Positions 6,621 through 12,928 of a DNA stretch of 64,000 nt are shown here, in pieces. How positions within the stretch are numbered: the stretch's first letter is position 1; each line of letters begins with the position of its first letter. Below the pieces are notes generated by a model. That model saw only the letters and a program-made list of their open reading frames with translations, was not told where the DNA came from and did not search any database. The stretch lies in assembly GCA_002104945.1 (NCBI GenBank), contig MCFH01000009.1, forward strand, positions 1 to 64,000, read 5' to 3'. The translations under genes and the position numbers were made by a program. Source of the stretch: Piromyces finnis finn (lineage: Eukaryota; Fungi; Neocallimastigomycota).

Positions 6621-9600
6621 TTATCTTTTTCTTTTTCTTCCTCCAGTAGCATTATGACTTTTTGAATTATTTTCAAATTTCATTTTATAACTATAAAAGA
6701 TAAAAAATAGTTAATATTTTTATTCATTAAAATCCTTCAATTATAACTTCTTTAGAAATTTATTATATAATACCTTTTATAGTCTATAGTTTGTTTTAAT
6801 ATTCCTGATAATATAAACTCATTAGAATGAATATTATCATATCCTTGTTTAACCATTGTTTTACAAATAGAAATATCATCAGGGCAACTTAGAATGACAA
6901 TATCATTGTTAGCTTCCTCCGGTAAATCTTTTATTAACTTTTTATTTTTTATTTCATATAACATAAATTATTTAAAATTTTATTTTTATATAATAATTGT
7001 ATAAATTTAGGTATATTTACTATTCCTCCAGCTGCGTTAATAATAATTTCCATTTCATTAAATGGTGGTTTGGTATTTGGTGTCATATAAAATGTTAATC
7101 CTTTAAATAATGGATTATTTTTTTTGTCATGCGCAATTTTCAATGATGATTTCATTGTAAATTTCCATTTTTTTTCTGATGCCGCATCTTTTAAAATATA
7201 TTTATTTGGATCTTTTAACAAGAAAATATGGTAAATAAACAAAGTAGAACATAAATATATTAATATCTTTATCAATTTAATATTAAGCAAAAATAAATTC
7301 TTATAATTTATATACCCAAAAATTTTCCTGCTTTTTTACTGGCTTTAACCCAATTTAAAGATACAATTTTTTTACCAGTTGCTAATACACACAAAAATTT
7401 GACTGTTCTTCTAATTTTATCTGTTACAAGATGTGTGCAATTTTCCCATGATTCTTCAACAATACCACCTAAATCTTTTACAATCTTTAAATAATTTAAA
7501 ATTAAAGATTTAATGATATTATAAATAAATAAAAATATATATTATATATAGACTTACATCAAAGTACTGATCATCTATACCAGTAAAAGTAATTCTTGGA
7601 ACATCGCTATTTTGTTCTTCTATATCAATATCTATAGTTATTTTACTTTTCTTTGTTGTATTTGAATTATCACTTTTTTCATTAATTTCATCATTTTTTC
7701 TCTTCCTTTTGTTAACTATTATATAAATTATTATTATTATTATTATTATCTTAACATTTTAATGATATTTATAATCAATTAAAATATACCTTTGCCTGCA
7801 TCATTCATTTTACCTTGTTGTATTTCATTCTTTTCAATATTTTCAATCTTATTTTTTTTACTTTTGTTAGTCCCCTTTCTATCTTTTTTTGAATTCTTAT
7901 CTTTATTTTTCAAAGTCTTATTTTCTTTTTGTTTATCAATTTCATTAATTCCCAAAGTCTCTATAACTTCAATTTCATTGCTATTTTCTTTATTTATAAT
8001 ATTATTTTCAACAATATTTATAGTATTTAGTTCTTCGCTTATATTAGTATCATTACTAGTTTTCTTTAAATCTTCATCTAATTCATTCTTTTTATTGTTT
8101 TTTTCTTTAATTTCATTATTATCTAAAAAATATTTATATATAATTATTAATATTATTATTATTAATATTATTATTATTATTATTATTATTATTATTATTA
8201 ATATTATAATTATTTTATTATATTTACTATTATTATTATTATTATTATTATTATTATTATTATTATTATTATTATTATTATTATTATTATTATTATTATT
8301 ATTATTATTATTATTATTATTATTATTATTATTATTATTATTATTATTATTATTATTATTATTATTATTATTATTATTATTATTATTATTATTATTATTA
8401 TTATTATTGTCATCTGTCTTTTCTTTATGAATTTGAATTATTTATATCATAATACCTATTTTATATTCAACTTTACTATTAGTATTAATTTCAAGGTTTA
8501 CTGAATCATTTTCTTTAATTATATCATTGTTTAAAACCTTATCTATTTCCATACTATCATTTATTTCAATATTATTATTATGAATATTTAGATTCTTATT
8601 CATTTGATTATTTTCTTCGGTTAGTTCTTTATTTATTATATTACTTTTTTCAAGTAAATCTTCGTTTAATAAGTTATTTTTATTAATTAATTCCTCAATC
8701 AATATATTTTCTTTAGTTAATTTTACTTCCATTAAATTATTTTCTTTAGTTGATTCTTCTTTCATTGAATTATTTTTGCTAACTACTTCTTTATTTATTA
8801 AATTATTATCATTGTCATTACTTAATTCTTCATTCATTAAATTGTTTTCTTTAATTGACTCTTCATTTAATGTATTGTTTTCATTAATCAACTCTTTTTC
8901 TTTTATTGATTCTTCGTCTAATGAATTATTTTCTATAGTTAATTCTACTTCCATGAAATTACTTTCTTTAGTTGATTCTTTATCTATTAAGTTATTTTCT
9001 TTAGTTAATTTTTCATCCATTAAATTATTCTTACTAATTAATTCTTTATTCATCAATTTATTTTCATTATCATTATTTAATCTTTCATCCATTAAATTAT
9101 TTTCTATAATTGATTTTTCATTTAATGTATTATTTTCATTAATCAAATTTTTATCTATAATTAATTCTTCATCTAATGATTTATTTCCATTAATTGTATC
9201 TTCATTTATTAAATTGCTTTCTTTAATTAATTCTTTATCTAATAAATTATTTTCTTTAATTGATTTTTCATTTAATGTGTTGTTTTCATTAATCAATTCT
9301 TTCTTCATATTTGATTCTTCATCTAATAAATTATTTTCACTATCATTATTTAATCTTTCATCCATTAAATTATTTTCATTATCATTATTTAACTTTTTAT
9401 CTATTAAATTATTTTCTTTATTTGATTCTTCATTTAATAATGTACTACTTTCATTAATCAACTCTTTTTCTTTTATTGATTCTCCATCTAATGAATTATT
9501 TTCTTTAGCTAGATCTTTATCTATTAAGTTATTCTCATTGTCATTACTTAATTCTTCATCCATTAAATTATTTTCTTTAATTGATTTTTCATTTAATGTA

Positions 9601-12600: not shown

Positions 12601-12928
12601 AATTGTTGTTATTCCTTCATAAACAGGAAAAATTCTTTCAGGTTGTCCATCTTGTTTTAACACTTTTAAATGTGCAACCTTTTATTATAATTAATCATAA
12701 ATACTATTAATTTAAAATCAAAATAAATTTCTTAAAAAATACTTTATAAAAAAATGATTATTATACAATTTTTCTATCTTCATCACTTGATGTATCAGAA
12801 TCGGACATTTCATCAGCATTATAATTTACATTGTCATCATTTTTTCTTTGTGAATCATTACTCACTATTTTTTGTGTATCTTTACTTTTAAAATTCATTT
12901 CATTTTCTAAATTTTCAATTTCAGACAT
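6621..12928 (-). CDS. MDC1: MDC1-like DNA-damage mediator: N-terminal FHA, acidic and repeat-rich centre, C-terminal tandem BRCT
   Basis: FHA: GITTIGRIDSNDICLNYLGISSYHAKIEVVCNEHFIEDLHSTNYT...ISFGRTKCIY (12291-12683). Tandem BRCT: PRITFTGID...LGGIVEESWENCTHLVTDKIRRTVKFLCVLATGKKIVSLNW...FYMTPNTKPP...SCPDD...SNEFILSGILKQ (6769-7600), which closely matches human MDC1 SHLVTDRIRRTVKFLCAL as recalled. All predicted introns are GT-AG with consistent phases. Confidence 0.85.
8228..8408. repeat. (AAT)n microsatellite, about 60 codons of poly-Asn inside the MDC1-like CDS
   Basis: Perfect trinucleotide run of about 180 bp. It lies between an AG acceptor (8423-8424) and a GTAAAT donor (about 8226) in the frame KTDDNNN.... 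Confidence 0.9.
8640..11360 (-). repeat. Coding higher-order tandem repeat: degenerate roughly 11-aa unit, two near-identical 726-bp copies (8934-9659, 9660-10385) and a further segment duplicated 1863 bp apart
   Basis: TCTCCATCTAATGAATT occurs at 9481 and 10207 (offset 726 = 242 aa), and CTTAATTCTTCATTCATT occurs at 8821 and 10684. Protein units resemble KENNLMDEELS / KENNSLDEESI. Confidence 0.95.

What the first reader, a model, noticed from the sequence alone, without database searches (positions are those of the whole stretch)
6621..12928. Full-architecture MDC1-like DNA-damage mediator in an early-diverging fungus
Seen: one gene model joins an N-terminal FHA domain, acidic Ser/Thr patches (SDSDTSSDED, DSGEETETE), a huge central repeat and a tandem BRCT pair. 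The BRCT pair keeps the phosphopeptide-pocket motifs F-T-G and I-R-R-T-V-K-F. Established: in human MDC1 these residues (Thr1898, Arg1933, Lys1936) read gamma-H2AX; budding yeast has no MDC1 and fission yeast has only the reduced Mdb1. Inference: gut fungi retain an animal-like FHA-repeat-tBRCT gamma-H2A reader, implying this architecture predates the animal-fungal split. An ORF track sees only fragments and a repeat.
Basis: partly seen in the sequence, partly recalled or inferred. Interest (0 to 1): 0.75.

Follow-up and report, generated by a model that had tools for sequence, protein, structure and literature searches.

The report
Gut-fungus MDC1 orthologue with expanded repeat
This is a real, expressed gene of an anaerobic gut fungus that encodes the fungal counterpart of the animal DNA-damage scaffold MDC1 (FHA domain at the front, tandem BRCT at the back), but such fungal MDC1 proteins are already named in public databases and their ancient origin was proposed in 2014, so it is a sound but ordinary finding.

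Summary
On the minus strand, 12928..6621 is one 14-exon GT-AG gene of about 1610 aa. It encodes an N-terminal FHA, two acidic Ser/Thr patches, a 1052-aa repeat exon and a C-terminal tandem BRCT. Every quoted motif is present.

RNA-derived contigs from 4 runs in 3 studies confirm the 5' junctions and the splice out of the repeat exon. They also reveal two micro-exons (13 nt and 5 nt) that sequence reading alone had missed. Two related gut fungi carry FHA-to-BRCT orthologues on single cDNA contigs.

The tandem BRCT falls in a fungal MDC1 clade, sister to animal MDC1 and outside PTIP (AU p=0.02). The phosphate-pocket residues match human MDC1. A model of the orthologue's tBRCT fits MDC1-gammaH2AX crystal structures best. 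The FHA is of the MDC1 type.

The novelty claim does not hold:
- Chytrid, blastoclad and zoopagomycete orthologues are already labelled "Mediator of DNA damage checkpoint protein 1".
- Wei et al. 2014 already inferred an opisthokont (or older) FHA+tBRCT ancestor.
- The central repeat is species-specific, not retained from animals.
- No TQXF cluster is present.

Binding to gamma-H2A remains inferred. The scan noted this stretch once before, as the same first-stage note on the same DNA.

The parts
12767..12928 (-). Exon 1: start codon (12928-12926), N-terminal tail with an acidic Ser cluster ...EMSDSDTSSDEDRKI just before the FHA
   Evidence: Translation. The junction 12767|12678 is seen in contigs of 4 runs. 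The contigs extend to about 13055-13080, which is the 5' UTR. The acidic cluster is kept in P0300 and P0153, but there it reads SDSESSSDED.
12534..12678 (-). Exon 2: first half of the FHA domain (GR and SxxH phosphothreonine-binding residues)
   Evidence: Pfam FHA, 20.8 bits. Best PDB hits are MDC1 FHA. MDC1-family FHA profile, 39.6 bits. 96% identical to P0300.
12291..12448 (-). Exon 3: second half of the FHA domain (DLHSTNYT loop)
   Evidence: Pfam FHA, 19.8 bits. MDC1-family FHA profile, 51.0 bits. Junction 12534|12448 is seen in contigs.
12166..12178 (-). 13-nt micro-exon GTGAAAGAAGAAG (VKEE + first base of the next codon)
   Evidence: Contigs of 4 runs carry 18 nt between 12291 and 11909 (tables 5 and 5c). 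The genome has tag|GTGAAAGAAGAAG|gtaaat. Orthologues read PVKEEEK / PVKEEET at this point.
11993..11997 (-). 5-nt micro-exon ACAAG
   Evidence: These are the last 5 of the 18 inserted letters. The genome has tag|ACAAG|gtaaaa directly after a poly-A run.
11843..11909 (-). Exon with the conserved acidic patch ISLITDEKEANDSGEETETEIE
   Evidence: Contigs align from 11911/11909 downwards, and junction 11843|11768 is seen. The patch is kept in P0300 (NDSGDETETEIE) and P0153 (NDSSDETEIE).
11703..11768 (-). Small exon EMEILTENNKSDITEKIINIK
   Evidence: Junctions 11843|11768 and 11703|11611 are seen in 3 runs. 77% identical to P0300.
8456..11611 (-). Repeat exon (1052 codons). After about 85 unique residues come 11-residue units of consensus ENNL[MI]DEEL.K (about 50 units delimited, some as 13- and 17-residue variants), with a 242-residue super-repeat. 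Composition N 24%, E 18%, L 13%, K 11%.
   Evidence: Open frame, tandem repeats, unit analysis. One contig runs from the 5' UTR through exons 1-6 to 11218, and others run from 8875/8734 to the donor at 8456. A single-sequence AF2 model of one 242-aa copy is two long helices, pLDDT 76 (weak evidence). No match in the orthologues P0300 or P0153.
8123..8455 (-). Intron 7, containing an (AAT)~92 microsatellite at 8134-8408
   Evidence: TRF. Contigs that end at 8456 continue with the first 30 letters of exon 8 at 8122 (table 7).
7814..8122 (-). Exon 8: K/E/N-rich linker. The acceptor at 8122 is confirmed. The donor is either 7814 or 7790; both are in frame and neither was tested.
   Evidence: The loose-end letters at 8456 equal the sequence at 8122 onward. 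The remaining contig length (about 1135-1154 nt) fits exons 8-13 plus a 3' UTR with either donor.
7558..7715 (-). Exon 9: basic NLS-like KRKRK, then the first strand of BRCT1 with PRITFTG (Thr equivalent to human MDC1 T1898)
   Evidence: Alignment A1. tblastn of P0300 ends exactly at 7558.
7316..7484 (-). Exon 10: core of BRCT1 with TDKIRRTVKF (equivalents of human R1932, R1933, K1936)
   Evidence: Pfam RTT107_BRCT_5, 6e-12. Best PDB hit is MDC1, 49.6 bits, against PTIP 37.7. Alignment A1.
7021..7211 (-). Exon 11: inter-BRCT linker and first half of BRCT2
   Evidence: Pfam BRCT_2. PDB hits: PTIP 35.8 bits, MDC1 25.5 bits. Boundaries match P0300.
6774..6937 (-). Exon 12: second half of BRCT2 (EFILSGILKQ)
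   Evidence: Pfam BRCT_2. PDB hits: PTIP 34.5 bits, MDC1 18.9 bits. Boundaries match P0300.
6621..6690 (-). Exon 13: C-terminal tail ending GGRKRKR, plus the stop codon (6623-6621)
   Evidence: The same tail is present in P0300 and P0153.

Best explanation
The locus encodes the anaerobic gut fungus's orthologue of MDC1 (Mdb1 in fission yeast, MU2 in flies), a chromatin-bound scaffold of the DNA double-strand-break response. Shown here: it is one expressed, spliced gene, with an MDC1-type FHA at the N-terminus and a single MDC1-type tandem BRCT at the C-terminus. Its tBRCT belongs to a fungal MDC1 clade that is sister to animal MDC1. Inferred mechanism: (1) The tBRCT docks on the phosphorylated C-terminal SQ tail of histone H2A. 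The Thr of F-T-G and the Lys of T-V-K-F would hold the phosphate, and the second Arg of I-R-R-T would hold the free C-terminal carboxylate, as in the human MDC1-gammaH2AX crystal structure. (2) The FHA, which keeps the Arg/Ser/His/Asn phosphothreonine-binding residues, would mediate phospho-dependent self-association or partner binding. (3) The two conserved acidic Ser/Thr patches, one just before and one just after the FHA, are candidate CK2 sites that could recruit the FHA/BRCT modules of Nbs1 or the TopBP1 orthologue. (4) The basic KRKRK and GRKRKR stretches would direct nuclear import. (5) The 1052-residue N/E/L/K-rich 11-mer repeat is a species-specific expansion of the poorly conserved middle region. 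It most likely acts as a long helical or flexible acidic spacer and not as a conserved binding module.
For: Gene structure and expression:
- The exon model closes in frame.
- RNA-derived contigs from 4 runs in 3 studies lack the introns and show the junctions 12767|12678, 12534|12448, 11843|11768, 11703|11611 and 8456|8122. One contig spans the 5' UTR through to the repeat exon. Others span the end of the repeat exon plus about 1150 nt further, which is the length expected for exons 8-13 plus the 3' UTR.
- The orthologues P0300 (807 aa) and P0153 (766 aa) from related gut fungi lie on single intron-less contigs and carry Pfam FHA + RTT107_BRCT_5 + BRCT_2. Their alignment to the window breaks exactly at the exon ends.

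Family:
- Pfam matches on the separate exons.
- The BRCT1 exon is closest to human MDC1 in the PDB.
- An exhaustive search gave 792 relatives. The nearest named ones are chytrid, blastoclad and zoopagomycete proteins called Mediator of DNA damage checkpoint protein 1. 74 of the best 150 have the same N-terminal FHA.
- A chytrid tBRCT query returned chytrid and then animal MDC1, with no PTIP among the 120 listed.
- Careful ML tree: PTIP clade 100/97, animal MDC1 97/93, fungal MDC1 clade including the gut-fungus pair 95/93. The AU test rejects gut fungus + PTIP as a clade, p=0.021.
- Pocket residues align with human MDC1.
- The AF2 model of the orthologue's tBRCT has pLDDT 94.6. Its best structural matches are MDC1 tBRCT, including the gammaH2AX complex 2AZM (E 1.7e-23 to 3.7e-23, TM 0.87-0.91), followed by PTIP BRCT5/6, Brc1 and Mdb1, which are all gammaH2A(X) binders.
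- FHA: a family-specific profile gives 39.6 + 51.0 bits on the two exons. The orthologue's FHA is closest to MDC1 FHA in the PDB, E 1e-6.
Against: - No binding experiment exists. Whether this genome has an H2A with a C-terminal SQ tail, Nbs1 or TopBP1 could not be checked.
- No single RNA molecule or contig spans the roughly 2.3 kb middle of the repeat exon, so continuity there rests on the open reading frame and on fragmentary contigs.
- The runs are only guessed to be RNA by their record. They behave as RNA because the introns are missing.
- Summed over the three BRCT exons, PDB scores are slightly higher for PTIP BRCT5/6 (108 bits) than for MDC1 (94 bits). Sequence similarity alone therefore does not separate the two; the tree and the FHA do.
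- The structure model and the tree used the natural orthologues P0300/P0002/P0003 as stand-ins. These are 72-100% identical to the window over the BRCT exons. The window's own joined protein was not used.
- The TQ-rich cluster seen in chytrid and invertebrate MDC1 is missing here: only 3 S/T-Q sites lie before the BRCTs.
- The single SDT is not conserved in sister species.
Confidence: 0.85

Rival explanations
1. It is a true MDC1-family gene, but in this lineage it has drifted away from gamma-H2A reading. It might act mainly in mitosis or at the spindle, as partly described for fission-yeast Mdb1, or as a general acidic chromatin scaffold. In that case the repeat would be the functionally dominant part.
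For: The TQ cluster typical of chytrid and invertebrate orthologues is lost. The middle region is replaced by a huge species-specific repeat. Mdb1 has a gamma-H2A-independent mitotic role (PMC4013092).
Against: All phosphate- and carboxylate-binding residues of the tBRCT are intact. BRCT1 is 93-100% identical among three gut fungi while the middle is not conserved at all. That pattern is what purifying selection on the reader module predicts.
Confidence: 0.09
2. The tandem BRCT belongs to the PTIP/PAXIP1-Brc1-Rtt107 lineage and not to MDC1, and the FHA is an independent acquisition.
For: The two BRCT2 exons score higher against human PTIP BRCT5/6 than against MDC1. Pfam's best model is named after Rtt107 BRCT5.
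Against: The PTIP clade is separated from all FHA-bearing proteins with 100/97 support, and the gut-fungus sequences lie in the fungal MDC1 clade. The AU test rejects the union with PTIP, p=0.021. There is only one BRCT pair, not six BRCTs. The FHA itself is MDC1-type. The best structural match is MDC1. The motif is IRRTVKF as in MDC1, whereas lamprey PTIP reads VTRTVKF.
Confidence: 0.03
3. The single gene model is an artefact: two or three neighbouring genes (an FHA gene, a repeat gene and a BRCT gene) were joined by eye.
For: No contig spans the whole of the repeat exon. The donor of exon 8 is not pinned down.
Against: Contigs join the FHA exons to the start of the repeat exon, and join the end of the repeat exon to exon 8 and about 1150 nt beyond. 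The repeat exon is one uninterrupted frame whose phases match both flanks. Orthologues in two related fungi have the FHA and tBRCT in one ORF on one cDNA contig.
Confidence: 0.03

Closest known systems
Fungal 'Mediator of DNA damage checkpoint protein 1' of early-diverging fungi. Examples: KAJ3022732.1 Thoreauomyces humboldtii; KAJ3225004.1 Chytriomyces hyalinus; Batrachochytrium dendrobatidis; KAL7748811.1 Sorochytrium milnesiophthora; RKP39583.1 Dimargaris cristalligena.
   Same: Same architecture (N-terminal FHA, disordered middle, C-terminal RTT107_BRCT_5 + BRCT_2). Same clade in the tBRCT tree. 57-67% identity in the BRCT1 core.
   Different: The chytrid and zoopagomycete proteins carry clusters of (P)TQ motifs after the FHA. 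The gut-fungus protein has almost none, and instead has an N/E/L/K 11-mer repeat about 1000 residues long. Its genome is extremely A+T-rich, and its tBRCT sits on a long branch at the base of the fungal clade.
Human/mammalian MDC1 (PDB 2AZM, 2ADO, 3K05 for the tBRCT; 3UMZ, 3VA1 for the FHA)
   Same: FHA at the N-terminus and tBRCT at the C-terminus. Phosphate pocket Thr (FTG) and Lys (TVKF), and the RR pair, are identical. The tBRCT model of the orthologue superposes at TM 0.87-0.91 with 37% identity. The FHA is closest to MDC1 FHA. Acidic CK2-type Ser patches lie next to the FHA.
   Different: No six-fold SDT(D) array, no TQXF cluster and no PST repeats. The central repeat is unrelated in sequence. 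The acidic Ser cluster lies before the FHA, not after it.
Schizosaccharomyces pombe Mdb1 (PDB 7P0L; Wei et al. 2014, PMC4013092)
   Same: A fungal MDC1-family gamma-H2A reader with a C-terminal tBRCT. It has a single SDT-type acidic motif, which in Mdb1 binds Nbs1 (PMC6175577).
   Different: Mdb1 has no recognisable FHA, and its tBRCT is much more diverged: 22% identity to the gut-fungus model against 37% for human MDC1.
PAXIP1/PTIP BRCT5-6 (PDB 3SQD) and S. pombe Brc1 BRCT5-6 (3L40/3L41)
   Same: Sister type of gamma-H2A(X)-binding tandem BRCT. Similar sequence scores and fold.
   Different: Those proteins have six BRCT domains and no FHA. They form a separate, well-supported clade.

Membership tests
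MDC1 family (MDC1/MU2/Mdb1) | C-terminal tandem BRCT of the MDC1/PTIP type (Pfam RTT107_BRCT_5 followed by BRCT_2) | tested here: met
   Pfam on exons 10-12. PDB matches. AF2 model of the orthologue's tBRCT, pLDDT 94.6; best fold matches are MDC1 tBRCT.
MDC1 family (MDC1/MU2/Mdb1) | Phosphoserine pocket (Thr/Ser of F-T-G, Lys of T-V-K-F) and Arg that binds the free C-terminal carboxylate (human T1898, K1936, R1933) | tested here: met
   Alignment A1 with human MDC1 isoform 4 and rat MDC1: window PRITFTG and TDKIRRTVKF against human KVLFTG and TDRIRRTVKF. The residue roles are taken from PMC4013092.
MDC1 family (MDC1/MU2/Mdb1) | tBRCT groups with MDC1 proteins and not with PTIP/PAXIP1 | tested here: met
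   Careful ML tree of 67 tBRCTs: PTIP 100/97, fungal MDC1 clade including the gut-fungus orthologues 95/93. AU test p=0.021 against union with PTIP. Limits: natural orthologues P0002/P0003 stood in for the window.
MDC1 family (MDC1/MU2/Mdb1) | N-terminal FHA domain of the MDC1 type (present in animals and Amoebozoa; not recognisable in Mdb1) | tested here: met
   Pfam FHA on both exons. A profile built from FHAs of tBRCT-bearing relatives scores 39.6 and 51.0 bits. Best PDB hits are MDC1 FHA. GR, SxxH and the STN loop are present.
MDC1 family (MDC1/MU2/Mdb1) | FHA and tBRCT on one polypeptide | tested here: met
   Spliced contigs link both ends to the repeat exon. Orthologues lie on single cDNA contigs. 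The middle of the repeat exon is not spanned by one contig.
MDC1 family (MDC1/MU2/Mdb1) | Direct binding of phosphorylated H2A/H2AX C-terminal tail | not testable with these tools
   This needs a peptide pull-down or fluorescence polarisation. The H2A gene of this genome was not available.
Mammalian MDC1 motif set (not family-defining; PMC11014961 states these motifs are unique to mammals) | Repeated SDT(D) CK2 motifs that bind NBS1 | tested here: inconclusive
   There is one SDT inside SDSDTSSDED in exon 1. Sister species read SDSESSSDED there. Mdb1 also has a single SDT, which binds Nbs1.
Mammalian MDC1 motif set (not family-defining; PMC11014961 states these motifs are unique to mammals) | TQXF cluster (RNF8 docking) and PST repeats | tested here: not met
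   No TQxF/TQx-hydrophobic cluster (none in exons 2-9; exon 1's lone TQKI was not counted). Only three S/T-Q sites lie before the BRCTs. The central repeat is N/E/L/K-rich, not P/S/T-rich.
PTIP/PAXIP1 - Brc1 - Rtt107 | Six BRCT domains (three pairs), no FHA | tested here: not met
   BRCT matches occur only in exons 10-12, and the FHA is at the N-terminus. The sequences lie outside the PTIP clade.

The most novel reading that the evidence does not exclude
The array of hendecad (11-residue) units built on ENNL[MI]DEEL.K (about 50 delimited units, roughly 950 residues), found in this species but not in two related gut fungi, may not be mere low-complexity filler. It could be a functional module that has replaced the TQ/SDT docking clusters of other MDC1 proteins. 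One option is a long 11/3-type helical rod that sets the reach or the oligomeric state of the scaffold. Another is a multivalent array of about 45 CK2-consensus sites that recruits phospho-binding repair factors.
Probability: 0.12. Interest if true: 0.45.

Novelty: new member of a known kind. Interest (0 to 1): 0.25.

Why it matters
The result adds the anaerobic gut fungi (Neocallimastigomycota) to the lineages shown to keep a recognisable FHA-tBRCT MDC1. It comes with transcript-level support and a corrected gene model that includes 13-nt and 5-nt micro-exons.

It strengthens the published view that MDC1 is ancestral to animals and fungi and was reduced or lost in yeasts. It does not change that view.

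On the practical side, gene predictors in this very A+T-rich genome may break such genes at micro-exons, microsatellite-bearing introns and long coding repeats. The tBRCT of early-diverging fungi is also much closer to human MDC1 (37% identity) than that of the yeast model Mdb1 (22%). That could make chytrids a better fungal model for MDC1 biology.

Tried and rejected
1. Word-index protein search with the repeat exon and with the orthologue P0300. Both came back blank. One search did not even return its own query, so low-complexity composition defeats this tool here. The blanks say nothing about whether the window's protein is in public databases.
2. My first model took a 13-nt micro-exon followed by an acceptor at 11893. 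The RNA contigs showed an additional 5-nt micro-exon and an acceptor at 11909.
4. Reading the (AAT)n tract as a poly-Asn coding stretch was rejected. Contigs splice from 8456 to 8122.
5. PDB bit scores could not decide MDC1 versus PTIP: 94 against 108 bits when summed. The tree, the AU test, the FHA and the fold ranking decided it.
6. Looking for H2A, Nbs1 or nibrin among the scan's notes gave nothing usable.
7. A literature search for MDC1 together with chytrid or Neocallimastigomycota terms listed no paper that mentions MDC1.
8. The loose end at 8421 leads to sequence that is not in the window. I treated it as a chimeric or intron-retaining contig.
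Full report
THE OBSERVATION

The region has about 17% G+C. On the minus strand there is a chain of open segments. With canonical GT-AG introns they close into one reading frame running from the ATG at 12928-12926 to the stop at 6623-6621.

Pfam results:
- FHA in both FHA exons, at 20.8 and 19.8 bits for two half-domains.
- RTT107_BRCT_5 (6e-12) and BRCT in exon 10.
- BRCT_2 in exons 11 and 12.

The central exon (11611-8456) is a 1052-codon open frame. 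After about 85 unique residues it consists of 11-residue units built on ENNL[MI]DEEL.K. About 50 units were delimited, some as 13- and 17-residue variants. A 242-residue super-repeat has 44% self-identity at that lag. Composition is N 24%, E 18%, L 13%, K 11%.

IS IT ONE GENE?

Four public runs from three studies hold about half of the locus's words. Laid on 8409-13100, the contigs behave as cDNA:
- The intron bin 12020-12176 is empty in all four runs.
- Joints fall at 12767|12678, 12534|12448, 11843|11768 and 11703|11611, with CT..AC ends (GT..AG on the gene's strand).

Between 12291 and 11909 the contigs carry 18 extra letters. These decompose into a 13-nt micro-exon (12178-12166) and a 5-nt micro-exon ACAAG (11997-11993). 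Both are flanked by AG and GT in the genome. This corrects my first model and gives 4833 nt, or 1610 aa.

Contigs of 1137-1146 nt run from the 5' UTR (about 13055-13064) through all the small exons to 11218, inside the repeat exon. Contigs of 1430-1555 nt cover the last 279-420 nt of the repeat exon up to 8456. They then continue with the first 30 letters of exon 8 at 8122, and with about 1150 nt in all. That is the length expected for exons 8-13 (1061 nt) plus a short 3' UTR. The (AAT)~92 microsatellite is therefore intronic.

The middle of the repeat exon is covered only by short contigs. One joint there (9864 to 10095) looks like a repeat collapse in assembly or a length variant.

RELATIVES

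An exhaustive profile-free search with the 56-residue BRCT1 exon found 792 relatives. Cluster look-ups revealed two full-length orthologues from related gut fungi, each an uninterrupted ORF on a single intron-less contig:
- P0300: 807 aa, from a Logan assembly of SRR8270244.
- P0153: 766 aa, from JGI sample 3300018087.

Both carry Pfam FHA + RTT107_BRCT_5 + BRCT_2.

Their tblastn alignments to the window stop exactly at my exon ends, including all the 3' exons that I could not test with reads. Their FHA is 94-96% identical to the window's in exon 2, and BRCT1 is 93-95% identical. Their middle regions do not match the window's repeat exon at all. The giant repeat is thus a species-specific expansion: 1610 aa here against about 800 aa in the relatives.

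The next nearest proteins are from several phyla:
- Chytridiomycota: Thoreauomyces, Geranomyces, Spizellomyces, Gaertneriomyces, Batrachochytrium, Chytriomyces, Rhizophlyctis, Lobulomyces, Polyrhizophydium, Quaeritorhiza.
- Monoblepharidomycota: Hyaloraphidium.
- Blastocladiomycota: Sorochytrium.
- Zoopagomycota: Dimargaris.
- Mucoromycota: Calcarisporiella.

Many of these are already named "Mediator of DNA damage checkpoint protein 1" in NCBI or UniRef. 74 of the best 150 hits carry the same N-terminal FHA. A chytrid tBRCT used as query returns chytrids and then animal MDC1, including the human isoform 4. No PTIP appears among the 120 proteins listed.

MDC1 OR PTIP?

PDB bit scores are ambiguous. 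BRCT1 favours MDC1 (49.6 against 37.7 bits). The two BRCT2 exons favour PTIP BRCT5/6 (35.8 and 34.5 against 25.5 and 18.9 bits).

A careful maximum-likelihood tree of 67 tandem BRCTs resolves it. The natural gut-fungus orthologues P0002 and P0003 stood in for the window, and 39 redundant or long-branched rows were left out.
- Six proteins named PAX-interacting protein 1 form a clade (100/97).
- Animal MDC1 forms a clade (97/93).
- All fungal FHA-tBRCT proteins plus the gut-fungus pair form a clade (95/93). The gut fungi branch near its base.
- Forcing the gut fungi together with PTIP costs 15.9 log-likelihood units and is rejected (p-AU 0.021).

An alignment with human and rat MDC1 shows the pocket residues conserved. 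The window has RITFTG and TDKIRRTVKF, human has KVLFTG and TDRIRRTVKF, and lamprey PTIP has VTRTVKF.

An AlphaFold2 model of the P0300 tBRCT (50-sequence alignment, pLDDT 94.6) matches these structures best, in order:
- Human MDC1 tBRCT (3K05, 2ADO, and the gammaH2AX complex 2AZM): E 1.7e-23 to 3.7e-23, TM 0.87-0.91, 37% identity.
- PTIP BRCT5/6-gammaH2AX.
- Brc1-gammaH2A.
- Mdb1-gammaH2A, at 22% identity.

The FHA also belongs to the family. A profile built from the FHAs of the tBRCT relatives scores 39.6 and 51.0 bits on the two exons. The orthologue's whole FHA is closest to mouse and human MDC1 FHA in the PDB (E about 1e-6).

MOTIFS

Human MDC1 shows six SDT(D) motifs, four TQXF motifs and the S168/S196 acidic motifs. 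Chytrid, zoopagomycete and invertebrate orthologues show clusters of (P)TQ-hydrophobic motifs. The window protein has none of these clusters:
- Only three S/T-Q sites lie before the BRCTs.
- There is one SDT in exon 1, and sister species read SES at that position.

Two acidic patches are conserved among the three gut fungi. One lies immediately before the FHA (SDS[DE][ST]SSDED) and one just after it (NDSG[ED]ETETEIE). They fit the CK2 consensus and resemble, loosely, the acidic Nbs1- and TopBP1-docking sites of MDC1 and Mdb1 (PMC6509287, PMC6175577). This is a lead, not a result.

A single-sequence AF2 model of one 242-residue repeat copy is two long helices (pLDDT 76, pTM 0.26). That is weak evidence for a helical rod.

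WHAT IS KNOWN

Wei et al. 2014 (PMC4013092) identified Mdb1 and made three points. [quoted passage not shown] They were lost in many fungal lineages. [quoted passage not shown]

Database annotation already labels many early-diverging fungal orthologues as MDC1. A literature search listed no paper mentioning MDC1 together with these fungal phyla.

Earlier notes of this scan name the genome Piromyces finnis and report other micro-exons in it. I did not verify the species.

VERDICT

The gene is a genuine, expressed MDC1 orthologue and a new member of a known kind. Its role as a gamma-H2A reader is a well-founded inference, not a demonstration. The "full architecture" and novelty claims are overstated.

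The features specific to this locus are a roughly 1000-residue 11-mer repeat expansion, two micro-exons and a microsatellite-bearing intron.

Noticed in passing
window 12166-12178 and 11993-11997 (minus strand): Two consecutive micro-exons of 13 nt and 5 nt lie inside this gene. They are seen as 18 inserted letters in cDNA-like contigs of 4 runs. The 5-nt exon ACAAG sits directly after a run of about 20 A. Other first-stage notes on this genome report 2-nt and 3-nt micro-exons, so very short exons may be a general trait of this genome that gene predictors miss.
   Followed up: partly
window 8134-8408: An (AAT)~92 microsatellite (92% matches) lies inside intron 7 of the gene. In frame it would read as about 70 Asn, but the transcripts splice it out.
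   Followed up: yes
window 9864-10095: Contigs of two runs skip 230 nt inside the repeat exon. This is either a repeat collapse in short-read assembly or an allelic or strain length variant of the coding repeat.
   Followed up: no
window 8421: Contigs of three runs read from the repeat exon past the 8456 donor into the intron, and at 8421 continue with sequence that is not in the window. This is probably a chimeric or intron-retaining contig that breaks at the microsatellite.
   Followed up: partly
P0016, P0015, P0067 and other chytrid, mucoromycete and zoopagomycete MDC1 orthologues (not in the window): These fungal MDC1 proteins carry clusters of (A/P)PTQ-hydrophobic motifs after the FHA, up to 10 copies in Dimargaris. 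They resemble the TQ arrays of invertebrate MDC1 (19 to 24 TQx-hydrophobic sites in an insect and a crinoid). The gut-fungus orthologues have lost them.
   Followed up: partly
window 4590-5471 (minus) and 14662-16296 (plus): The neighbouring ORFs are separate genes. One is an N/S-rich 293-aa ORF with a long (SN)n run. The other is a 544-aa ORF in a locally G+C-richer stretch (about 32% G+C).
   Followed up: no
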